Sequence record: ON287372.1 | Reading direction: 5' to 3' (one strand) | Length of the DNA stretch: 64,000 bases | Shown: piece by piece, positions 1,902 to 45,696 of the stretch | Layout: every line of letters starts with the position of its first letter | Position numbering within the stretch: the first letter of the stretch is position 1 | Notes under the pieces: model-generated | Database searches by the model: none | The model's input: only the letters and a program-made list of their open reading frames with translations | Told to the model about the DNA's origin: nothing | Program-made: the position numbers and the translations under genes

Positions 1902-3236
1902 TCAAACCTTCTCGAGATAAAGCATTAGGGCAGCCGCACTTTTCATCGTGTTAGACATTAGCCCAGGTTGCTCTCCAGTCCATTGTTCATTGGCCTGAAT
2001 TAAAACCCCTTCCATTAACGTAACGTTCCCGCCATTATCGTAGTAGACTCTGACAGGCATCCCTGGAGTAAGCAGTCTGATATCTGACCGTTGCCAGGTT
2101 GTTACCATAAGCATACCACGCTTACCTGAAAGATCAGACTGGACTTTAGCAAGGTTATCAGTAACCCCGCGAACTCCCGCCAATGCGCGCTTATCTGCAC
2201 GTGGCTCAGCACCAATGTCTGCACTGATATCCTGACGGTTATAGACAGATTGGTTATTGTCGTTAATCGCAGGCTTATCCAAGAACCCAGAGGCTCGGGT
2301 AAAGTGGATTGCAGTCTCACCGTTAATGCTGTTTGAGACGGAGAGGTCTTGCATCTTAACCGCACCTGCGCAAACTACCGTAATCTCCTCACCAACCTTC
2401 TTGAAAGAACGATCGGATGCAGGGATCATCAGAGATGAGCTCTGGATGATGGTCAATCTACGTGTTGTGGTCTTAAACCGGCGAGTATTGAACAATGGGT
2501 AAACGTACCAACGCTGGTTTTGAATGAACGACCCGATACCGTGATTATAAATCCCGTTTATCTCATCCTGAAGAAACGCAGCCAGACCAACCATCCGGAT
2601 GTTGTTCTCAATAACTAGATCCTGGATCACATCAGTAGGTTTATCGTTATCTGGATCGACAACATCTAACGAAACGAGCTTAGGTAATCCTTTAGCTGCA
2701 TCTTCATTGGTCTGAGTGATGATCATAGACTTCAGAACTTCAACCGGTTTAGCGTACCGGAATATGCCCTGGGCATACTTGGTATTCATTGAGACAGCGA
2801 TAGGATCAACCAACTGGATACGTAGCATTCTCAGCTCATCTTTACCATCCGTGTAAGGGGCATTAGTTACAGATGAGTCAGAGGTTAATTGGGCAGCGGA
2901 GTTATCTTTCAGGATAACGCGGAATGCGGTAGTGTACCGTAAACCAGAAGTCAACAGAGTACTGGAGACAGGGTCGACTTGTTCCTGAACCAGTGTAGCG
3001 TTCAAGTTGTCACGGTTAGCGTACAGCAAGTTATAGTCAGCTGTGATGACTGCGATATTCATTTCGGTGTCATGAGTAAAACTCGTGACGTAATCAGACT
3101 CTGTGTATTTCTCAATAACACGAGTCACTTCCAGCTTTCGATTTGGCAATGTGAAAATAAGACGGAACCGGAATCGGGGATAACTCCCCGACCCAGCTAT
3201 CTCCATTGCCTGTTTTCTCAACAGGGCAGCATTCAT
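1902..3236 (-). CDS. Virion structural protein, probable baseplate hub-like (phiKZ gp101-like position)
   Basis: 444 aa, last gene of the conserved structural operon; assignment by synteny and size. Confidence 0.5.
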   Translation of the reverse strand: MNAALLRKQAMEIAGSGSYPRFRFRLIFTLPNRKLEVTRVIEKYTESDYVTSFTHDTEMNIAVITADYNLLYANRDNLNATLVQEQVDPVSSTLLTSGLRYTTAFRVILKDNSAAQLTSDSSVTNAPYTDGKDELRMLRIQLVDPIAVSMNTKYAQGIFRYAKPVEVLKSMIITQTNEDAAKGLPKLVSLDVVDPDNDKPTDVIQDLVIENNIRMVGLAAFLQDEINGIYNHGIGSFIQNQRWYVYPLFNTRRFKTTTRRLTIIQSSSLMIPASDRSFKKVGEEITVVCAGAVKMQDLSVSNSINGETAIHFTRASGFLDKPAINDNNQSVYNRQDISADIGAEPRADKRALAGVRGVTDNLAKVQSDLSGKRGMLMVTTWQRSDIRLLTPGMPVRVYYDNGGNVTLMEGVLIQANEQWTGEQPGLMSNTMKSAAALMLYLEKV

Positions 3237-3802
3237 TTATAGAAGTTCCTTTTACGTACTGGACCGAAATCAATACGCTCATTAACTGGAACGTAATCTG
3301 CAGCTCTACGAATCTCAATATCGCTCTTAGGCTTAATGAGGGTAGGGCTGAAATCAACGTAGCCTTTAAAGACATTGTGAACCTCAGGCATCTTGGCAGT
3401 TCTGACTTTGTTGTAGATGTGCCGACCAAGTTCATCTAGTGATTGGAGATCACGTAGACGTTCTTGGGTGATTGCAGGATCTTCAATGTGCATACTACGA
3501 CTGATTGACTTCATGTAAACTTCAACGTCGTGAATGTGCTCTTGAATGATCTTGTGCATACTACTGATTGCCTTCATCCCCTCTACCATCGTGAACTCTG
3601 AACCAGCTTGGTAAAGATCCAACAATTGGTTGATGGTACGCCATACACGAGTACGGCGTTTAGATGCCATCTGATCTAACAGAGATGAGCCCGTTGTAAA
3701 GCTGCCGCGATGACCGACCATATTCTCATCGACCGCATCGTACTCGTACATCTCTACGTTGAACGGCTTATGGAAAATTAAGTACCCGGCGGAATAACTC
3801 AT
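3233..3802 (-). CDS. Conserved phiKZ-like protein in virion operon
   Basis: 189 aa, ATGA-type overlap with neighbours. Confidence 0.7.
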   Translation of the reverse strand: MSYSAGYLIFHKPFNVEMYEYDAVDENMVGHRGSFTTGSSLLDQMASKRRTRVWRTINQLLDLYQAGSEFTMVEGMKAISSMHKIIQEHIHDVEVYMKSISRSMHIEDPAITQERLRDLQSLDELGRHIYNKVRTAKMPEVHNVFKGYVDFSPTLIKPKSDIEIRRAADYVPVNERIDFGPVRKRNFYK

Positions 3803-5157
3803 GAAGGAAGACCTCGTAATGCTGCTGGGATAATCGAATACATGATCGGGAGGTAATAGAACCGCTCCAGGTTAGACCAGTCTCGAGAATCCTTGAAAAG
3901 ACCAATCAGTATCTTGGCATCGATAGAGCCTTGATCCAACGTTTGCCAAACCAGTGTCTCCAATGTAGACATGGCATCTGACTTACGGTAGAAGTCTGAG
4001 CTGAGGACGTAGTAGTCATCGACATCGACTAGCTTGATTCCATTCTCTACTTCCGGCTCGGCGTTCGGGTCACGCGGGACACCATTACGCTCAGGGATTT
4101 TACCGGGCTGTAGTGTTTTAGCCTTAGGGGCAGTCTCCGGGAAATTAGGGAAGTAATCATCCGGGTTGCTCTTAGGGTAGAACACGAACGGAATACCGAC
4201 ATACCAGGATGAACCGTAATACGGGTTACGTAAGAACATGGACGTATCGACAATCGGGATCTTTGCTTCCACTACGTCGATCAAATACGGATCGGTGTGC
4301 AGTAGTGCATCGAACAGTGTTCTGAATTCCCGGATATGGCTGTCCATTACGTTCAGGTTATTCATCCCGTTAAACGTGCCAACTTCTAACTGCGACCAGA
4401 GGTTGGTAACGAACTTCGTGATGAAGGGATCGTAAACGGCTTTACGACCTTGATCCGGAACCAATAACGTACCATACTCCCGATTGAAGTATTGCGTCAT
4501 GTACTGACGCGGGAGCCGATTACGAATTGACTCAAACTCTTCGGTAGCGTTATGGGCTTCGTCGGTGAGTATCGGGTTAATCCCACTATCCAAGAAAGAT
4601 TTGTGGAAATAATACTCACGCTGGACTTTACTCATCATCACTTCGTATTCACGCTGAGTCAGGAATGACTTCAGGACATACTCGATAGTGAATGTGGTCT
4701 GGCGATAGATGGTACGCTGCTGGATGTTTTCAGTAACCTGGTACAAGCCCAGTTTACCATCTAACAACGAGGCAACAAACATGTCACCTACGTTAGGACG
4801 AACCCCTGGATACATGTTTGCAGTACCACGACCAGTGAACTCGTTATTACTCGGGTCATAAGTCGGGTTTGCAGGTAACGGGTCAGTTACCATCAGTTCC
4901 AGTTTGTGGATCAGGTTGTATTGCTGGTGAATCCCCAGACGAGTCATCTGGTGACTGGATGTTTCATCATCCTTGTTGAGTACCTGGGAGAAATACTCCA
5001 CCATCCAACTACGTCCTTCAATGGCCGTAAGCATAGTCGACACTGGGGTATACTCAGTATCAACCGCCAAGCCTTTGAAAGGAGTTGGGTTAGGTAGAAC
5101 CTGCGGCGGTAAAATACTCGACGCGTTTTCGTCGTCATCAAACAGAGACATTGTCAA
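3799..5157 (-). CDS. Virion structural protein (neck/tail-completion candidate)
   Basis: 452 aa, coupled within structural operon; phiKZ-like synteny. Confidence 0.6.
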   Translation of the reverse strand: MTMSLFDDDENASSILPPQVLPNPTPFKGLAVDTEYTPVSTMLTAIEGRSWMVEYFSQVLNKDDETSSHQMTRLGIHQQYNLIHKLELMVTDPLPANPTYDPSNNEFTGRGTANMYPGVRPNVGDMFVASLLDGKLGLYQVTENIQQRTIYRQTTFTIEYVLKSFLTQREYEVMMSKVQREYYFHKSFLDSGINPILTDEAHNATEEFESIRNRLPRQYMTQYFNREYGTLLVPDQGRKAVYDPFITKFVTNLWSQLEVGTFNGMNNLNVMDSHIREFRTLFDALLHTDPYLIDVVEAKIPIVDTSMFLRNPYYGSSWYVGIPFVFYPKSNPDDYFPNFPETAPKAKTLQPGKIPERNGVPRDPNAEPEVENGIKLVDVDDYYVLSSDFYRKSDAMSTLETLVWQTLDQGSIDAKILIGLFKDSRDWSNLERFYYLPIMYSIIPAALRGLPS

Positions 5158-11701: not shown

Positions 11702-13156
11702 TTATTCGGCCATACCGGAAAGGTCGGTCGATTTCGCTTTAAGTGACTTCTCAGCGTACTCTAATGAGATACGCGCCATATTACCGAAGTAGGATGCAAG
11801 TTTCGTTGTAGGGCCGCTGAGGCGACTTGCTACGGTGCTGGTGATGGTACGAAGAGAGCTCATGGTGGATTCGAGATCTTTAGCATCCTCATCACCATTG
11901 GTGTTCTGAAGACGGGAACCTGCACGATTGATTTCATTCATTGCAGAGTTGCGATCAGAAACTAAACCGTCCAGTCCACGGAGGATTTCACCAATGTTCT
12001 TAACTGATTCGGCAATGGCACGGCAATCGGTAGCGGAAAGACGATTGAACTCATTTTCCTCTTCATCGCTAACCCCGGAGTTACCCATGTTCCATTTCTT
12101 AGATTCTTCAGAATCATCGAGGAACTCAATCCGTGAGTTACGTACTGCATTAGCTACGTTGCGAATGTACGCATCCGGGGTATCGGCTTCCTGAGCCTTA
12201 ACAACTACAGCGGCCAAAGTACAGTTACCCAAGAGCTTATCGGAGACGAGTGTCTCAGCAACGATACCGTTGTTGCCGCGCAGTAAGATTTCTGCCAAAG
12301 AAGGCTCTTCAGTTTTCTTCATGAAGGAAGTCAACGAGTTGGTTGGCTCCTCAATGATCTTACGGATTTTGTCCGCTGCATTACCGACTGAACCGGCATC
12401 GGTGGCATCAGTGGATGCTACTACAGAAGCAATACCTTTTGCATGGTCAATCGCTTGCTGTTGGAGATCCATAAATGATGCGCGGCAGATATTAGCCAGG
12501 TCACGCAGGTGACGAGGAACATCATTGACTTGACCGTCGATAGCCAACTTACCGATACGGCTGGACTTAATACGATCGTCACCAGGTATGCGGTCTTCCG
12601 CATTGTCCAGAATAATCTGGGCACGGCTAACCAAACGATCGGCACCAGTGAGTACACGCTGAGCCCATTGCTCCATGTGTTGACCCATGGCCTTCAGCCA
12701 TTCACGGAAACGAGTCCACCACTCACGGATGACTTCTTTGAAGCCTTCCAACGCAACAGCGGTTTGGCTCTGGCCAAGTACCGAGTAGGATTCGTTGGAT
12801 ACGTACATGGAGATCGGCAACCCTTCCTTCTCTGCGAACAGATTAAGGAAAGTGGCAGCTTCCATGGAGATACCCGACTCTTTGTTTTTCTCAATGACAT
12901 CTACCACACCTTCGTAGGTTTTGATAGTGTCAGTGAAATCTTTTTCTTCTACTACCGAAGCAAAGTCTTCATCTTCTGGGATGTCAATATTGGCGATAGT
13001 TGGGTTAGTTTCAACTGGATCTGGGATCTCTGCCGGAGGAGCTTCGTTAGGTACGATCTCGTCTTTGTGATCCACTACTACAGTATCACCGGCAAACTCT
13101 TCTACTGCAACTTTTGGTTTAGCGGCGAGAATGCGTTGATAGTAATTTGGTTTCAT
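11702..13156 (-). CDS. phiKZ-like internal head protein paralog
   Basis: ISMEAA...VSNES...VALEGFKEVIREWW; TATG at 13185-13188 upstream. Confidence 0.8.
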   Translation of the reverse strand: MKPNYYQRILAAKPKVAVEEFAGDTVVVDHKDEIVPNEAPPAEIPDPVETNPTIANIDIPEDEDFASVVEEKDFTDTIKTYEGVVDVIEKNKESGISMEAATFLNLFAEKEGLPISMYVSNESYSVLGQSQTAVALEGFKEVIREWWTRFREWLKAMGQHMEQWAQRVLTGADRLVSRAQIILDNAEDRIPGDDRIKSSRIGKLAIDGQVNDVPRHLRDLANICRASFMDLQQQAIDHAKGIASVVASTDATDAGSVGNAADKIRKIIEEPTNSLTSFMKKTEEPSLAEILLRGNNGIVAETLVSDKLLGNCTLAAVVVKAQEADTPDAYIRNVANAVRNSRIEFLDDSEESKKWNMGNSGVSDEEENEFNRLSATDCRAIAESVKNIGEILRGLDGLVSDRNSAMNEINRAGSRLQNTNGDEDAKDLESTMSSLRTITSTVASRLSGPTTKLASYFGNMARISLEYAEKSLKAKSTDLSGMAE

Positions 13157-34451: not shown

Positions 34452-35798
34452 CTATTTCTTAATTAAAGGGTCTTTATCTGATCCAACGTAATACGTGTTG
34501 GGATGATTAGTGGGATGGTTCATTTTATCCGACAACGTACTATAATGCTTACCCAAAGCGTCGGCGGCTAGACGTAGAGAGCCGTAATGTACTCCATCGA
34601 CTACGACAGCTTTCGAAGTAGTGCGGATTAACTTACTATCGTCTTCTATTTCTACTTTCTCCCAATTAGGGAATCTATTATCCTGGGCTCTCCTGACTAC
34701 AGTAGATGAAGAAACTCCGTAAGCCTCTCCAGCTTCAGCTGCGGTAAAAAATACTTTACCATCTACCCGATAACCAGTCCGGTCTGAGCTCTTAGCGACT
34801 GTCTCTGAAACTTTTCCTGATTTAACATCGGGATCATGTTCAGAACCGATCATGTACCACCCTGGGTAATTTTTATTAACTAACCTACGAGTAATACTAG
34901 ACTGGTTGATACCGAGAATACGAGCACACTCTGAAGCAGATGGATACTTAATCCCATCGCCCATGATTGCTTTGGAAATAGCAGTGGCTGTATTCCGGAT
35001 ATGTTCCTCGGAGTTAGGTCTACCTTTCCGTACTTCAGACATCTTGCGTTTAGTTTCTTCGGAAGCGACTTTACCCATCTTAGCTAGAGACATTTTACGG
35101 CGTGATTCTTCAGATTTAGGTACCCCTAAAGCAGGTGCCTCCGCAAGATCTCCTATGTTAAATACCGGTTGCTCTTTCTTTATCTGAGACAAAGCAACAT
35201 TCTCTAACCAGAAAGGAGTCATGGTTTCAGTGGTGCGAATAAGAATAACTTTTATCTTATCGGTAGGTTGGCCACTGAACAAGTTAAAGGTCTTCTGCAG
35301 ACTGCGGTTGTGGTGTTGGTTAGACTTAAGGGCGTTCTTGTGCTCCATTAGTCGCTTGTAGATATTGTAACTTGATCCAATGTACACTCTATCCACATCG
35401 TTTAGCTGGAGTATATAGACGCCAGCGAAAGCGCCCTCGGAGCGCGAGAACCCGAAGTCCCCCATCAAGTCATCTATCACCACCACATCCACAATCTTCT
35501 CGTAGTCTCCATCATCGAAGATCGTCTCCCTGGTGTTAATCATAAACTCCGACCCAGAGACAAACGTTACCGAAGGCGGCAGATTAGCCAGGGGGACTTC
35601 CCCGTCTAAGTTCCAGCGTTCGGTATTAAAGAGATTCATGACCTCTTTTAGTGCACCCGGTAATACAACCTTAGGATTACGAAGTGCATTGATTGCAATC
35701 GTCATCAGAAGGTCATAAACCCCTGGACCAGGTTGGCCCAGGAGTAATTTACTTTTTACAATTAAAGCGGCATCTTCCGCCAGTATTAATTTACTCAT
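34452..35798 (-). mobile_element. Free-standing GIY-YIG homing endonuclease with NUMOD3- and NUMOD1-like repeats
   Basis: GVYILQ...VYIGSSYNIYKRLMEH; SEESRRKMS/SEETKRKMS repeats; three C-terminal HTH-like repeats; AT-rich. Confidence 0.88.
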
Positions 35799-42477: not shown

Positions 42478-42954
42478 TTAAGGTTTAATAGTGAAATACT
42501 TGGTCTGTTCCTTAAACCCATATTTCTTGTAAAACTTGTTAGCTCTCTTATTACTTGCGTGTACAGAAAGAGATAACTGGTCTACTTGCTGTATCTTAGC
42601 AAAGTTTCTTACCTGATCTACTAGGGCAGAACCGTACCCTAATCCTCGGTATGTTCTGTTTACGTAAAGGTAACATATAGAAAGCCATCTTGCCCCTGAG
42701 TTACCCACTGTACTCGTGAACTCGACAAAACCGATTGGGGAGTCTTTAACTAAAAGGATCAGTATATTCGTATTGTCAACCCAGCGTTCGGAAAGGCTGC
42801 TACATTTCATCTCTTCAGTTAAGATATCTAAGTTAGCCGACTTCTTCCAATACGTAGCTTCCCTTTTATCCATAGTCTGAATCATCTTTAGAAGTGCAGA
42901 CTCATAACCCTTTAGAGCTGGGTCAGTTGAACTAAGCGCGAGAATGAATTTCAT
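42478..42954 (-). CDS. GNAT-family acetyltransferase
   Basis: LYVNRTYRGLGYGSAL; NKRANKFYKKYGF. Confidence 0.88.
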   Translation of the reverse strand: MKFILALSSTDPALKGYESALLKMIQTMDKREATYWKKSANLDILTEEMKCSSLSERWVDNTNILILLVKDSPIGFVEFTSTVGNSGARWLSICYLYVNRTYRGLGYGSALVDQVRNFAKIQQVDQLSLSVHASNKRANKFYKKYGFKEQTKYFTIKP

Positions 42955-42980
42955 GGAATAATCTCAATAGATGAAATAAG

Positions 42981-43002
42981 GAGAGGGGCCGAAGCCCCTC
43001 TC
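42981..43002 (-). terminator. Terminator closing the ncRNA island
   Basis: GAGAGGGGC/GCCCCTCTC stem, UUCG loop on the minus strand, then CTTATTT. Confidence 0.7.
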
Positions 43003-43008
43003 GATACC

Positions 43009-43198
43009 GACGTTCAACGTCTTGTGCCAGGCGCCCTTTCGGGGCCTTCTCGCACCTAGGGACTCGCAGTCCCCATTTTACTCCAGCCGGATGTAACCTG
43101 CTTAGAGTTTGGTACCACTAACCGACTGGCAAACCCCTCGTAGTCACCGCTCAATTAGAGCGACCTCTACGCCAGACGTACGCTTCCCGATCAGTGGA
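43009..43198 (-). ncRNA. Structured ncRNA candidate A (~190 nt)
   Basis: ORF-free; nested stems CTGGC/GCCAG, GTAG/CTAC, CGCTC/GAGCG, GGGACT/AGTCCC, CCC-GAAA-GGG, GACGT/ACGTC. Confidence 0.55.
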
Positions 43199-43281
43199 AT
43201 TCTTCAATAAAAAAGATATGCAGTAGTTGACCATTAGCGAAGGTCTTAAGGCTGACTAAACCTTTCTACATATCAAGGAAA

Positions 43282-43788
43282 CTAGTTGATTAACCAGGTA
43301 ATTGGATCGTTATCAGTTCGGGTAGCTAACATTTCATAATACTTAGTCATGTTAACTCGAGAACTAATATTATCGAAGCAGTCGAAGAATACTGCGGATA
43401 CATCGATAGGTAAATCTACTTTACCTAGTACCAAATCTTTTGCGGTGTATATCCGCTTAGATAAAGTCTTTTGGTTTCCTGCATCAATACCTACTTGTAC
43501 TAAGTTAGGTACAGGGATTGTTCCGCCAAATACTTGTGGGTACTTGTAGCCCATTCTAAGGAAGTCGTCCTTAAAGTCACTGTTGATAACAATAACAAAG
43601 GCTTTAGGATCTTTGATTAGCTGCTCAATAATCCAGCGGCTAGATCCACTTTGGCGAGATGCATGAATCCCGTAAGTGAAGTACTCTTTCAATGCGTGTG
43701 GACGGGAAAGTCCAATACATTTAATCACGTCATCAGAAGGTCTTGACTTGAGGAGTTCTTGCATGATCGCATCACGGTTGATGGTCAT
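43282..43788 (-). CDS. Degenerate P-loop-like protein inside the ncRNA island
   Basis: SRQSGSS resembles terminase-type RQxGK(T/S); VFFD resembles Walker B. Confidence 0.55.
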   Translation of the reverse strand: MTINRDAIMQELLKSRPSDDVIKCIGLSRPHALKEYFTYGIHASRQSGSSRWIIEQLIKDPKAFVIVINSDFKDDFLRMGYKYPQVFGGTIPVPNLVQVGIDAGNQKTLSKRIYTAKDLVLGKVDLPIDVSAVFFDCFDNISSRVNMTKYYEMLATRTDNDPITWLIN

Positions 43789-43820
43789 CGTAGAATCGTC
43801 CTAGTTTGGTTGTTGGTTTT

Positions 43821-43897
43821 TAGGTACGCGGATTCCATTCCACAAAGTCTTTAGGCGGCAGGCAGATGAATGCGGCTACTTGAGACTTACGTACCTA
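43821..43897 (-). ncRNA. Structured element G
   Basis: TAGGTACG/CGTACCTA outer stem and AAGTCT/AGACTT inner stem. Confidence 0.4.
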
Positions 43898-43899
43898 AT

Positions 43900-44026
43900 T
43901 GGGTGACGCCCCCAGGAATCGCACCTGGCTTTCCGGTGCTGTTGTCGCGATCTCGCCACAACAGTTGCTGGCACTTAGCCCCCACCGCGCCCAGCTGGCG
44001 CAGTCTGCTTTTTACGTGCAGGCGTC
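43900..44026 (-). ncRNA. tRNA-ended ncRNA B (127 nt)
   Basis: Acceptor GACGCCT/GGGCGTC, T-arm CCAGG-TGCGATT-CCTGG, 3' ACCCA; non-tRNA multi-hairpin interior. Confidence 0.65.
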
Positions 44027-44040
44027 ATTGTTCTTTTAAA

Positions 44041-44129
44041 TCGGATCGAGAGTAGGGATCGAACCTACGCAGTCTTACGGACGTATCCGCCGTCGAATTC
44101 CTCACTAGGTTTAAGTAGACTATCTCGAT
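44041..44129 (-). tRNA. Class-II-like tRNA with aberrant D and anticodon arms (pseudo or tRNA-like)
   Basis: 7-bp acceptor ATCGAGA/TCTCGAT, canonical T-arm GTAGG-TTCGATC-CCTAC, variable-arm hairpin GTC-CGTAA-GAC; no 7-nt anticodon loop. Confidence 0.55.
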
Positions 44130-44139
44130 AAAACTTTAG

Positions 44140-44216
44140 AAAGGGAAGGCGTCCCCACTGCAGATTCGTTTCACAACAGGCTGACTACAATCAACCTCCC
44201 TCTGCAATGAGGACAT
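44140..44216 (-). ncRNA. Structured element E
   Basis: GTCCTCA/TGGGGAC, TGCAGA/TCTGCA and AGGTTGAT/GTCAGCCT nested stems. Confidence 0.45.
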
Positions 44217-44219
44217 CTT

Positions 44220-44384
44220 TGGTGACACCCCTCAGAATTTCACTGAGGCTTATGGGCTGCCGACGGCTCGGGACGCGGAACTTCGCTCAAAGGCTTGTCT
44301 ACGTACCGTGCACTAAATACCGATTGCTGGCGATCGCCGCGACACGGTTGGGTTAAGGCTGCCGATCTTCTTGAGATCAGTGTC
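44220..44384 (-). ncRNA. tRNA-ended ncRNA D (165 nt)
   Basis: Acceptor GACAC(TG)/(GG)GTGTC, T-arm CTCAG-TGAAATT-CTGAG, 3' ACCA; begins 6 nt after the preceding tRNA. Confidence 0.6.
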
Positions 44385-44390
44385 GTTGTT

Positions 44391-44468
44391 TGGGAACCAG
44401 AGGAAGAATTTGAATCTCCAACCTCCGTCTTAGCAGGACGGTGCTCTATCCAGTTGAGCTACTCGTCG
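44391..44468 (-). tRNA. tRNA with GCT (Ser) anticodon, short variable loop and damaged acceptor stem
   Basis: D-arm GCTC-AACTGGATA-GAGC, anticodon arm CCGTC-CTGCTAA-GACGG, T-arm GGAGA-TTCAAAT-TCTTC; only 3 of 7 acceptor pairs. Confidence 0.7.
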
Positions 44469-44470
44469 CA

Positions 44471-45076
44471 TTATTCTTCTAAATAATACTTAGTGTATCT
44501 GAAATAAGACGATCTAGAGATTCCTGTAATTTTGCAGATCTCTTTAGAATTAAGTCCAGATTCCTTTAAAGATTTAACTTTGGCTATAAGCTCATCGGGT
44601 AAATGCCTTTCGCCTTTTTTAGAGATGGACGCTTTTCCATTTAGTACCTGCAATTTGGCGGCGCAGCTACGGGAGCAAGAATATCCAAATTTTCCTTTTC
44701 TCCGTATAACTTCGGCGGGAGTTAATTCTAATTCAGTATTACACTCTGGGTTATCGCATTTTACTTTAGTGTAAAATCCAGACTCTATTTTCTTCAACCT
44801 AACAAAGGCTTGACTCTTCCTGATATTCTCAGATTTAGTAAGTATTTGCAGGTTGGAAATATCGTCATTCTCTTTATCTTCATCTACATGGTCTACTTCT
44901 TCAGTAGGTAGAAGGATACGTTTAACTTCGATGGATTTAAGGTATTTTGCGTATGAAATTCCGAAAGTTTGTTTCTTGTCTTTATACAAGAGCACTCTTT
45001 TTCTGTTATCGGAACCATTTACCAGATAACCATAATCCCACTTTTCAGTGAAGGGAAATTCCAATTCAATTCTCAT
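44471..45076 (-). mobile_element. HNH homing endonuclease in the tRNA region
   Basis: VDHVDEDKENDDISNLQILTKSEN; CxxC motifs; C-terminal HTH; AT-rich. Confidence 0.88.
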
Positions 45077-45111
45077 GTTTTTTACATTAGTGTTAAAAAG
45101 CCTACACTAGA

Positions 45112-45128
45112 GTAATATATACATGAAC
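45112..45128 (-). promoter_or_regulatory. Early promoter of the HNH cassette
   Basis: GTTCATGTATATATTAC, identical over 17 bp to 40228-40244. Confidence 0.75.
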
Positions 45129-45160
45129 GTCAGTCCATTTGACCACTCTGGAACTCCCCC
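45129..45160 (-). pseudogene. 5' half of a Tyr-like tRNA, truncated at the HNH promoter
   Basis: GGGGGAG TT CCA GAGTGGTCAAA TGG A CTGAC matches the enterobacterial tRNA-Tyr acceptor/D-arm layout, then stops. Confidence 0.55.
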
Positions 45161-45237
45161 GTAATTCGTTTTGATTGGAGTAGGCGCGTAATGTCGCCTC
45201 GTGTTAGTTGCTCGCATTTATCATGCGCTACCTTTAA

Positions 45238-45307
45238 GGCATTCCGGTAGGGAGTCGAACCCTAAACCAACGCACTAGTGTGCGGAAGTTGTTCCACAAC
45301 CCGGACG
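45238..45307 (-). pseudogene. Degenerate tRNA
   Basis: Canonical T-arm TAGGG-TTCGACT-CCCTA, 5-bp acceptor TCCGG/CCGGA, aberrant D and anticodon loops. Confidence 0.5.
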
Positions 45308-45474
45308 ATTGAGATCGTACCCTTAAAGCTCTCCAATGCTTAGTGGGGATCCATCCCCGCTTGTAGCTGAATCTCATCTGGGTACCGACAATTCACCCGA
45401 AAGTTAATTGAACCAAATGATTACTTGATGCAGCTTCTACATACTTAAACTTGGTACGTAAAAAATGATCTTTA

Positions 45475-45633: not shown

Positions 45634-45696
45634 GGTAATATTCCTCCTGTACATAAGCAACATAAACCGACCGGGTTTCCCCAGCCGGTAGATGAA

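What the first reader, a model, noticed from the sequence alone, without database searches (positions are those of the whole stretch)
43009..45450. A 2.4-kb island of non-canonical tRNA-like and structured RNAs
About nine closely spaced structured elements and no fully canonical tRNA: two tRNA-ended long RNAs, a class-II-like tRNA lacking an anticodon loop, a chimeric tRNA, tRNA relics and hairpin RNAs. Standard tRNA scans would find at most one or two. They could be decoys for anticodon nucleases or uncharged-tRNA sensors, or ligands for a phage protein (inference).
Basis: partly seen in the sequence, partly recalled or inferred. Interest (0 to 1): 0.72.

Follow-up and report, generated by a model that had tools for sequence, protein, structure and literature searches.

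The report
Phage operon of non-decoding tRNA mimics
A giant Serratia phage carries a very strongly conserved operon of tRNA-shaped RNAs that cannot read codons; one belongs to a widespread phage RNA family I could not find described, so phages seem to use tRNA mimicry for something still unknown.

Summary
The window is Serratia jumbo phage vB_SmaS-Totoro. All features lie on the minus strand, and two strong terminators bracket them. Nine structured RNA elements sit there, interrupted by two real protein genes: a 168-aa RecA-like protein and an HNH homing endonuclease found only in Totoro. Standard scans call one tRNA. That one is a chimera derived from tRNA-Arg, with a GCU anticodon and a damaged acceptor stem. 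The HNH insertion removed all but 27 nt of the tRNA-Tyr that relatives keep.

The other RNAs are not decay. Flanking genes are 52-76% identical to other Moabiteviruses; the RNA blocks are 85-100% identical. Three RNAs have a 7-bp acceptor-like helix and a T arm but no anticodon loop, like T4 species 1 RNA. The element at 45174-45337 is a four-way-junction RNA with about 26 near-invariant junction bases and strongly covarying helices. It occurs in 65 isolate phage records and 24 viral contigs, often inside tRNA arrays, and matches no Rfam 15 family.

Best reading: a co-transcribed operon of stable tRNA mimics matured by tRNA-processing enzymes.

The parts
45666..45689 (-). Intrinsic terminator upstream of orf62; likely 5' boundary of the transcription unit that holds the island
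   Evidence: Terminator scan: 10-pair stem with 7 G-C pairs, followed by a T-rich tail
45338..45400 (-). C1: two conserved hairpins upstream of the four-way-junction RNA
   Evidence: Read from alignment A3. The scored interval 45160-45400, which runs from the last base of the tRNA-Tyr relic through the four-way-junction RNA and C1, is 94-96% identical to relatives. No homologue was found outside Moabitevirus.
45174..45337 (-). Four-way-junction RNA ('R1 family'). P1 is formed by the 5' and 3' ends. P2 carries a tRNA-like domain (45240-45307) with a D-like arm and a canonical T arm, and a tetraloop where the anticodon loop would be. P3 is a hairpin. P4 is invariant. The joining strands are near-invariant: AGC, GGUAG, AGCAAYUAACACG.
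   Evidence: Covariation: 96.4% of cells paired against 73% in shuffles and 30-49% when partners are slid; 102 double changes against 31 expected. The covariance model scores it at 126.6 bits, E 1e-31, with only one copy in the window. The minimum-free-energy fold alone recovers P1-P4. The best Rfam match is a sub-threshold mascRNA hit.
45134..45160 (-). Relic of tRNA-Tyr(GUA): the first 27 nt (acceptor 5' strand and D arm) of the Kodama-type gene, cut off by the HNH insertion
   Evidence: In alignment A3 identity with Kodama ends exactly here. Relatives have an intact tRNA-Tyr.
44471..45076 (-). HNH homing endonuclease gene, present only in Totoro
   Evidence: Pfam HNH_3, E 6e-7. PHROG HNH endonuclease, E 2e-30. 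Absent from all eight related loci.
44388..44470 (-). B1: chimeric class-I 'tRNA' with a GCU anticodon, derived from a phage tRNA-Arg(UCU). Its 5' acceptor strand comes from a different tRNA-like gene, so the acceptor stem is mismatched. CCA is encoded.
   Evidence: ARAGORN and Rfam calls. The Rfam alignment starts only at model position 5. The best nhmmer matches are tRNA-Arg(UCU) of T4-like phages. The 5' strand matches Kodama's extra element X.
44220..44384 (-). B2a: 165-nt tRNA-ended RNA. It has an acceptor-like helix, a D-like hairpin, a body of about 110 nt, a T-like arm (loop UGAAAUU) and an encoded ACCA.
   Evidence: The minimum-free-energy fold recovers the acceptor, D-like and T-like arms. 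RNAalifold gives compensatory changes against the Moabite/Yaphecito variant.
44145..44219 (-). B2b: long imperfect hairpin between B2a and B3
   Evidence: RNAalifold helix at columns 266-339, kept in the divergent Moabite version. Only a chance-level miRNA hit in Rfam.
44044..44129 (-). B3: tRNA-like RNA with a perfect 7-bp acceptor stem and a canonical T arm. Where the D and anticodon arms would be, it has an inner stem enclosing a near-invariant core of about 40 nt. No CCA is encoded.
   Evidence: Homologues sit inside the tRNA clusters of Klebsiella phage N1M2, Shewanella phage SXP01 and JD18-type T4-like phages. The acceptor, T and inner stems change by compensation between lineages. Identity among the other Moabiteviruses is 98.9-100%.
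43900..44026 (-). B4: 127-nt tRNA-ended RNA. It has a 7-bp acceptor stem, two elongated arms in the D and anticodon positions (the latter ends in a tetraloop), a T arm (loop UGCGAUU), and ACCCA at the 3' end.
   Evidence: RNAalifold, 40 pairs. Fold z-score -2.88.
43282..43788 (-). ORF168: small single-domain RecA-like protein. In relatives the Walker A motif reads PRQSGKT; in Totoro it is degenerate (SRQSGSS, lysine lost).
   Evidence: 15 representative homologues; alignment A6. AlphaFold model with pLDDT 86. Foldseek matches to DEAD-box domain 1 and the terminase ATPase domain are weak (E about 1e-3, TM 0.4-0.47). Homologues lie in tRNA or tRNA-like regions of other phages.
42981..43197 (-). 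A: RNA of about 195 nt with two domains, followed directly by a UUCG-loop intrinsic terminator (42981-43002)
   Evidence: RNAalifold: 79 pairs, 4 of them with compensatory changes. Fold z-score -5.64. Terminator scan.

Best explanation
The island is the tRNA operon of a phiKZ-related jumbo phage in which nearly every 'gene' is a tRNA-derived RNA that no longer decodes. Shown: the elements lie on one strand between two intrinsic terminators. Several keep the parts of a tRNA that processing enzymes recognise: a 7-bp helix joining the 5' and 3' ends, stacked on a 5-bp T-type arm, with a CCA-like tail in three of them. They lack a 7-nt anticodon loop. They are conserved far better than the surrounding proteins and show covariation. 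Inferred: the unit is transcribed as one precursor. Host tRNA-processing enzymes (RNase P at the 5' side of each acceptor-like helix, plus 3' trimming and CCA repair) cut it into stable small RNAs, as happens for phage T4 species 1 and 2 RNAs. These RNAs then work as tRNA mimics that occupy tRNA-binding proteins rather than ribosomal A sites. The partner and the benefit are unknown. One element is a member of a widespread phage RNA family: a conserved four-way junction whose second helix carries a tRNA-elbow-like domain. Separately, an HNH homing endonuclease has invaded the operon in Totoro. It destroyed tRNA-Tyr, the only canonical tRNA of the cluster, and left a chimeric GCU tRNA.
For: Identity and layout. 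Only one tRNA call. Conservation contrast: RNA blocks 85-100% identical against 52-76% for coding flanks, and ORF168 only about 40% identical at protein level. The four-way-junction RNA is 164/164 identical in 2050HW, BUCT660 and Kodama. Structure. Family-level covariation of the four-way-junction RNA. Its covariance-model hits score 85-127 bits for complete copies. In 14 of 21 loci a same-strand tRNA lies within 1.5 kb, and in 9 of them within about 11 nt, which is normal tRNA-to-tRNA spacing. B3 sits between tRNAs in T4-like, N1M2 and SXP01 clusters. T4 has the same arrangement: tRNAs, the SegB homing endonuclease, then rnaD and rnaC; rnaC ends in a T arm. HNH invasion.
Against: No transcript, end-mapping or processing data exist, so the RNA boundaries are inferred from helices. 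The promoter scan is at chance level. Near-100% identity across a background that is 55-75% identical could reflect recent recombination rather than selection. Covariation inside Moabitevirus rests on few independent lineages: Totoro against the rest, and Moabite/Yaphecito or the 2050HW group for parts. A, B2a, B2b, B4 and C1 have no detectable homologues outside the genus. Neither T4 rnaC nor rnaD is detectably homologous. The step from tRNA mimicry to binding tRNA-recognising proteins is entirely inference.
Confidence: 0.55

Rival explanations
1. A decaying tRNA cluster: the elements are tRNA pseudogenes and spacer debris with no function.
For: Decay is real at the HNH junction. The tRNA-Tyr relic is 27 nt long. 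B1's acceptor stem is mismatched. Haymo's tRNA-Tyr has an 8-nt anticodon deletion. Position 33 of B1 varies among U, C and A.
Against: The remaining elements are the most conserved sequence in the locus. They keep their helices through compensatory changes. Two of them belong to families shared by unrelated phage genera.
Confidence: 0.08
2. Anti-defence decoys: the mimics bind and block host tRNA-directed immunity (anticodon nucleases such as PrrC, PARIS AriB or retron/PtuAB effectors) or sensors of uncharged tRNA.
For: It fits the tRNA mimicry shown. It also fits the variable, dispensable tRNA-Tyr locus (two alleles, one deletion, one disruption) and the fast change at position 33 of B1. That phage tRNAs counter such systems is established knowledge, not tested here.
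Against: Most elements have no 7-nt anticodon loop, which is the part anticodon nucleases read. Accessory anti-defence genes are usually patchy and fast-evolving, whereas these RNAs are nearly invariant and the four-way-junction family spans many phage genera and hosts. No defence data are available.
Confidence: 0.17
3. Cis-acting processing or regulatory signals: tRNA-like 'punctuation' (as in plant mitochondrial t-elements or MALAT1 mascRNA) and 5'-UTR structures that set the ends and the translation of the orf62, HNH, ORF168 and GNAT messages.
For: B4 lies directly upstream of ORF168 and A directly upstream of the GNAT gene. Several members of the four-way-junction family sit immediately upstream of an ORF start rather than next to a tRNA.
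Against: A ends in a strong terminator before the GNAT gene. The same RNAs occur between tRNAs with no ORF nearby. Twenty-six near-invariant junction bases are far more than a cleavage signal needs. The downstream genes differ between family members.
Confidence: 0.12
4. RNA partners of a phage protein: the RNAs assemble with the RecA-like ORF168 protein, or another phage protein, into a ribonucleoprotein.
For: ORF168 sits between the RNA blocks in all Moabiteviruses. Its homologues lie among tRNA-like pieces in a 287-kb metagenomic phage that has no ARAGORN-callable tRNA, and between tRNAs in another contig. Its fold resembles DEAD-box domain 1.
Against: The structural match is weak (TM 0.4-0.47). 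The Walker A lysine is lost in Totoro and Moabite. The closest structural relatives are uncharacterised proteins of phages for which no link to tRNA regions was examined. N1M2, SXP01, JD18 and ChrisDB carry B3 or the four-way-junction RNA without an ORF168 homologue in the loci fetched.
Confidence: 0.08

Closest known systems
Phage T4 species 1 and species 2 stable RNAs (rnaC, rnaD) of the T4 tRNA gene cluster
   Same: These are small stable RNAs of unknown function encoded at the end of a phage tRNA cluster that also holds a homing endonuclease (SegB in T4, HNH here). rnaC is 139 nt and ends in a canonical T arm next to a helix formed by its 5' and 3' ends, like B2a and B4.
   Different: No detectable sequence or covariance-model similarity to any Totoro element. 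Totoro has many more such RNAs and, after the HNH insertion, no canonical tRNA beside them.
Bacterial Y RNAs of the YrlA type (partners of Ro60/Rsr)
   Same: Both have a tRNA-like domain with D and T arms and no anticodon loop, held at the end of a helix. YrlA is an RNase P substrate and can receive CCA (PMC4201824). The P2 domain of the four-way-junction RNA has that look.
   Different: The GNCGAAN0-1G motif that defines YrlA is absent from the sequence. No Y-RNA family appears among the Rfam matches up to E = 10. No TROVE/Ro60 domain was found among ten of the larger ORFs of the window. The conserved four-way junction has no counterpart in YrlA.
tmRNA tRNA-like domain
   Same: As in B2a and B4, the 5' and 3' ends form an acceptor stem stacked on a T arm, with a large insertion between them and a CCA end.
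   Different: ARAGORN calls no tmRNA and Rfam gives no tmRNA hit. The third acceptor pair is C-G in both RNAs rather than the G3-U70 alanine identity pair (read from the sequence). The RNAs are 127 and 165 nt, against roughly 360 nt for tmRNA.
tRNA-like processing signals (MALAT1 mascRNA, plant mitochondrial t-elements)
   Same: These are tRNA-shaped structures without decoding function that recruit RNase P or RNase Z. The best Rfam match to the P2 domain is mascRNA-menRNA (30.1 bits).
   Different: The hit is below the family threshold of 42.5 bits and the family is eukaryotic, so the resemblance is of shape only.
Phage-encoded canonical tRNAs used against tRNA-targeting defences (for example phage T5 tRNAs against PARIS or retron/PtuAB)
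   Same: Same genomic setting (phage tRNA clusters). Relatives carry tRNA-Tyr(GUA) here.
   Different: Those are decoding-competent tRNAs with anticodon loops. The Totoro elements are not, and Totoro has lost its tRNA-Tyr.

Membership tests
Canonical tRNA (element B1, annotated tRNA-Ser GCU) | 7-bp acceptor stem | tested here: not met
   The Rfam alignment covers only model positions 5-66. In the standard register only 3 of the 7 acceptor positions pair. Relatives form an 8-bp stem with one bulge, and Totoro's 5' strand breaks two of those pairs. That strand comes from another element.
Canonical tRNA (element B1, annotated tRNA-Ser GCU) | D arm, 7-nt anticodon loop with U33, and T arm | tested here: met
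   Present in Totoro, but position 33 is C or A in close relatives.
Bacterial tRNA-Ser | Class II long variable arm | tested here: not met
   The variable region is 5 nt long. The body is closest to phage tRNA-Arg(UCU).
Canonical tRNA (elements B3, B2a, B4 and the P2 domain of the four-way-junction RNA) | Anticodon stem with a 7-nt loop | tested here: not met
   ARAGORN and Rfam do not call them. Folds show tetraloops or a conserved non-cloverleaf core at that position.
T4 rnaC/rnaD family | Sequence or profile similarity to T4 rnaC or rnaD | tested here: not met
   nhmmer with every element, and covariance model R1, against the T4 locus L012 gave no hit to rnaC or rnaD; the only nhmmer matches in L012 were weak B1 matches to T4 tRNA genes.
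T4 rnaC/rnaD family | Stable non-tRNA RNA encoded within a phage tRNA cluster and carrying tRNA-like terminal features | tested here: met
   Location and anatomy agree. Stability itself cannot be tested with these tools.
YrlA / bacterial Y RNA | GNCGAAN0-1G motif near the 5' end | tested here: not met
   The motif is absent from the 164-nt sequence of the four-way-junction RNA printed. The motif definition is from PMC4201824.
YrlA / bacterial Y RNA | Encoded within about 4 kb of a Ro60 (TROVE) gene | tested here: inconclusive
   No neighbouring ORF has a TROVE domain, nor do ten of the larger ORFs in the window. The remaining roughly 215 kb of the genome was not scanned.
tmRNA | Detection by ARAGORN or Rfam, a tag reading frame, and a G3-U70 pair | tested here: not met
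   No tmRNA call. The acceptor stems of B2a and B4 have C3-G70.
Group I intron carrying a homing endonuclease | Intron core flanking the HNH ORF, with contiguous exons in relatives that lack the intron | tested here: not met
   No Intron_gpI hit up to E = 10. Relatives without the HNH gene have separate, complete tRNA genes at the site rather than a spliced-exon equivalent. The HNH gene is therefore free-standing, like T4 SegB.
R1 four-way-junction phage RNA family (defined here) | P1 to P4 plus the junction strands AGC, GGUAG, AGCAAYUAACACG | tested here: met
   Full-length match at 126.6 bits.

The most novel reading that the evidence does not exclude
The four-way-junction RNA at 45174-45337 represents an undescribed class of functional phage RNA. 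In this reading, a conserved junction core with riboswitch- or ribozyme-like invariance presents a tRNA elbow. The RNA is carried in the tRNA arrays of many unrelated phages and has a specific molecular activity: binding a ligand or protein, or acting catalytically in tRNA-array maturation. The Totoro island as a whole would then be a dedicated tRNA-mimicry operon rather than a translation aid.
Probability: 0.3. Interest if true: 0.85.

Novelty: new variant of a known kind. Interest (0 to 1): 0.64.

Why it matters
Phage tRNA clusters are usually explained by codon usage or, more recently, as replacements for tRNAs that host defences cut. Here a cluster has kept almost nothing except RNAs that cannot decode, and it keeps them more strictly than its proteins. 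This revives the fifty-year-old question of what T4 species 1 and 2 RNAs do. It also gives that question new handles: a family with a sharply conserved four-way-junction core found in many cultivable Erwinia, Serratia, Salmonella and Pectobacterium phages, and a second family (B3) shared by jumbo and T4-like phages. Both are missed by genome annotation, or mislabelled as hypothetical proteins or 'tRNA-Undet'. Both are directly testable in laboratory phage-host pairs.

Tried and rejected
1. Known RNA families. Rfam searches at gathering and permissive thresholds, on the island and on six loci with simpler family members, gave only tRNA hits. The exceptions were sub-threshold chance matches: mascRNA at 30 bits, SAM_alpha, mir-1323 and FTX.

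2. Group I intron around the HNH gene. Rejected (see the membership test).

3. tmRNA and YrlA. Rejected on their defining features.

4. Homology to T4 rnaC and rnaD. None found.

5. Wider relatives of A, B2a, B2b, B4 and C1. Sensitive blastn against 50,697 phage records found none outside Moabitevirus.

6. B3 pattern scans of viral and metagenome collections returned only T4-like and Moabite-type copies.

7. The MAFFT alignment of B3 was out of register for the JD18 group, so I did not run the pair-count tool on it. I tabulated its helices with a script instead.

8. The word-indexed protein search for ORF168 found only the query itself. The exhaustive search was needed.

9. ChrisDB gp19, a 169-aa ORF next to that phage's tRNA cluster, is not an ORF168 homologue.

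10. A full-text search for the conserved junction sequence found only unrelated primer matches. A catalogue of 10,006 candidate viral structured RNAs exists (PMC10690425), but I could not check whether it contains this family.

11. The sigma-70 promoter scan was uninformative.

12. The small ORFs annotated inside these blocks in phage Moabite are best read as spurious, because the conservation pattern follows RNA helices.
Full report
**What the window is.** Bases 42950-45460 match Serratia phage vB_SmaS-Totoro (ON287372.1, 278.8 kb, genus Moabitevirus) at 100% identity. Seven other Moabiteviruses cover 44-54% of that stretch at 88-93%. The phage is phiKZ-related: a phiKZ-type internal head protein lies at 11702-13156. 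All genes around the finding are on the minus strand. Two strong intrinsic terminators on that strand, at 45689-45666 and 43002-42981, bracket the region. The natural unit is therefore orf62, RNA block C, the HNH gene, RNA block B, ORF168, RNA block A, then the terminator.

**Checking the observation.** ARAGORN finds one tRNA in the 64 kb, at 44391-44467 with anticodon GCU. Rfam finds the same single hit at gathering threshold. With permissive thresholds the only other notable match is a sub-threshold mascRNA-type tRNA-like hit at 45240-45307.

The interval is not all RNA. ORF168 (43282-43788) and an HNH endonuclease gene (44471-45076) are real genes. The three non-coding blocks stand out by composition: 51-58% G+C against 33-45% in the genes.

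Reading and folding the minus strand gives nine elements, listed in 'parts'.

**Conserved, not decaying.** Totoro is a divergent member of its genus. Its helicase, GNAT, orf62, orf84 and orf297 genes are 65-76% identical to relatives at the nucleotide level. The zinc-finger gene and ORF168 are 53-55% identical, and ORF168 is about 40% identical as protein.

The RNA elements are much closer:
- B3: 98.9-100%
- B2: 99-100%, except in a Moabite/Yaphecito variant
- B4: 90-99%
- The C elements: 94-96%
- A: 85%

The 164-nt element at 45174-45337 is identical, base for base, in 2050HW, BUCT660 and Kodama.

Where sequences differ, helices are kept. Block A has 79 predicted pairs, 4 with compensatory changes and several G-U switches, and folds with a z-score of -5.6. 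B2 keeps its closing helix, T-like arm and long hairpin in the strongly diverged Moabite version. B4 folds as an expanded cloverleaf (z-score -2.9).

The high identity could partly reflect recent recombination. I could not separate that from selection.

**The tRNA-ended RNAs.** B2a (165 nt) and B4 (127 nt) begin and end with an acceptor-like helix stacked on a 5-bp arm with a 7-nt loop. They finish in ACCA and ACCCA respectively. Between the ends they carry elongated arms with no 7-nt anticodon loop.

B3 (85 nt) has a perfect 7-bp acceptor stem and a canonical T arm. In place of the D and anticodon arms, an inner stem encloses a near-invariant core of about 40 nt. B3 is not confined to this genus. 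Copies lie between annotated tRNAs in Klebsiella jumbo phage N1M2, Shewanella phage SXP01 and many JD18-type T4-like phages, and none is annotated. Across these four lineages the acceptor, T and inner stems have different sequences but stay paired, while the core barely changes.

Phage T4 shows the same design. Its tRNA cluster contains the SegB homing endonuclease and ends with the stable RNAs rnaD and rnaC, and rnaC ends in a T arm. I found no sequence homology between the T4 RNAs and any Totoro element.

**The four-way-junction RNA.** Sensitive blastn with block C hit Erwinia jumbo phages (Machinavirus) and 84-kb FelixO1-like Erwinia and Salmonella phages. In the latter, part of the match is annotated 'tRNA-Undet', 'tRNA-OTHER' or 'tRNA-Gln'. 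An 18-nt pattern taken from the conserved 3' part found 24 viral contigs of 5-381 kb, but only 12 places in 185,579 species genomes.

All members share one plan:
- P1 pairs the 5' and 3' ends, about 7 bp.
- P2 has seven covarying pairs below a variable distal domain.
- P3 is a covarying hairpin.
- P4 is invariant.
- The joining strands hardly change: AGC, GGUAG, AGCAAYUAACACG, and one or two bases before P1 closes.

On 21 distinct sequences, 96.4% of pair cells are standard pairs, against 73% after shuffling and 30-49% when the partners are slid. There are 102 double changes against 31 expected. The covariation score is 0.55 against 0.13.

A covariance model recovers all members at 85-127 bits. 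It finds exactly one copy in the window and none in the T4, JD18, N1M2, SXP01 or L023 loci. Energy minimisation alone recovers P1-P4 in Totoro.

The distal part of P2 often contains a T-arm-like hairpin. In Totoro it is a whole tRNA-like domain whose anticodon loop is replaced by a tetraloop.

In 14 of 21 loci a same-strand tRNA lies within 1.5 kb. In 9 of them it lies within about 11 nt, the usual tRNA-to-tRNA spacing. P1 (7 bp) plus P4 (5 bp) would give the 12-bp coaxial stack of a tRNA acceptor/T minihelix; that is inference.

No Rfam 15 family matches, even in members with short P2 inserts. A full-text search for the motif found nothing relevant. Isolate genomes leave the element unannotated or call it a hypothetical protein. 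A published catalogue of about 10,000 candidate viral RNAs could not be checked.

**The damaged end of the operon.** Relatives have a canonical 85-nt tRNA-Tyr(GUA) next to the GCU tRNA. It comes in two alleles, and Haymo's copy has an 8-nt deletion in the anticodon loop.

In Totoro, identity with the Kodama allele stops after nucleotide 27 of tRNA-Tyr, where the HNH gene with its own start region begins. On the other side, the HNH stop codon is followed by the 5' acceptor strand of a different tRNA-like element. That element is present in Kodama between tRNA-Tyr and B1, and in Totoro it is fused to the body of B1. B1 is therefore a chimera with a mismatched acceptor stem.

B1's body is closest to phage tRNA-Arg(UCU). 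It has no long variable arm, so it is not a serine tRNA in the bacterial sense. Its position 33 is U, C or A in otherwise near-identical relatives.

The HNH gene is free-standing and is not inside an intron. N1M2 shows the same kind of invasion of a tRNA-Asn gene.

**ORF168.** The exhaustive protein search gave 15 representatives. They share a PRQSGKT-type Walker A motif and a hydrophobic strand ending in aspartate. Totoro and Moabite have lost the lysine.

The AlphaFold model is confident (pLDDT 86). It is a single RecA-like domain that weakly resembles DEAD-box domain 1 and terminase ATPase domains. Its best structural matches are uncharacterised small proteins of phiKZ-like and T4-like phages.

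One homologue lies in a 287-kb metagenomic phage amid T-arm-bearing, tRNA-like pieces where ARAGORN calls no tRNA. Another lies between tRNAs. This is a lead for a protein partner, not evidence.

**Mechanism.** Shown: the anatomy, the conservation, the covariation, the tRNA-array context and the HNH invasion. Inferred: co-transcription between the two terminators, excision by RNase P and 3' processing as for tRNAs and the T4 stable RNAs, accumulation as stable RNAs, and action as tRNA mimics on tRNA-binding proteins.

It fits poorly with the absence of anticodon loops and with near-invariance across many phages and hosts. Processing-signal and ribonucleoprotein readings are also open.

**Verdict.** The island is a new variant of a known but unexplained kind: stable tRNA-like RNAs of phage tRNA clusters. 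It contains one member of a widespread RNA family that I could not find described.

Noticed in passing
window 44430-44436 (anticodon loop of B1) and alignment A2 columns 40-50: Position 33 of the GCU 'tRNA' is U in Totoro, Kodama and Haymo, C in Moabite, 2050HW, ParM25 and BUCT660, and A in Yaphecito, while the rest of the molecule is nearly identical. Either it is not a decoding tRNA, or the loop is under diversifying pressure.
   Followed up: partly
L003 (Moabite) and L008 (Yaphecito), insert of about 330 nt between B3 and B4; L010 (N1M2) about 3640-3720: Moabite and Yaphecito carry an extra structured segment. Part of it recurs right after tRNA-Asn in Klebsiella phage N1M2. This looks like another unannotated conserved RNA of phage tRNA clusters.
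   Followed up: no
L010 (N1M2) 2400-3050 and L011 (SXP01) 2080-2700: A long non-coding stretch conserved between two unrelated-host jumbo phages lies just upstream of their tRNA clusters and has no Rfam match. It may be a large structured RNA.
   Followed up: no
L010 (N1M2) about 2965-3626: A tRNA-Asn 5' half is followed by an HNH-like ORF ('G107 protein') and then by an intact tRNA-Asn. This is the same type of homing-endonuclease invasion of a tRNA gene as in Totoro.
   Followed up: partly
L002 (Kodama) 4510-4620, minus strand: A 95-nt tRNA-like element lies between tRNA-Tyr and B1. It has an oversized anticodon region and is not called by ARAGORN. It is the source of the 5' strand of Totoro's chimeric B1.
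   Followed up: partly
L009 (Klebsiella phage JD18) 2185-2318 and 2660-2890: The JD18 record annotates no tRNAs although ARAGORN finds four. The cluster also holds a tRNA-ended RNA of about 135 nt upstream of tRNA-Arg, and a structured tail of about 200 nt ending in a terminator, recalling T4 rnaC and rnaD.
   Followed up: partly
L023 3340-7100 (287-kb food-metagenome phage): Several kilobases around an ORF168 homologue are full of T-arm and D-arm fragments, yet ARAGORN calls no tRNA. This is a second island of non-canonical tRNA-like RNAs in a distant jumbo phage.
   Followed up: partly
window 34452-35798, minus strand: A 448-aa GIY-YIG/NUMOD homing endonuclease: a second free-standing homing endonuclease in the window.
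   Followed up: no
L005 (2050HW) 3319-3826: The ORF168 homologue of 2050HW matches in two frames, so it is either frameshifted or affected by a sequencing error. The record annotates only a fragment.
   Followed up: no
L003 (Moabite) 2978-5141: Six small 'hypothetical protein' genes annotated in Moabite (gp075, 078, 079, 080, 082, 083) lie inside the conserved RNA blocks and are probably not genes.
   Followed up: partly
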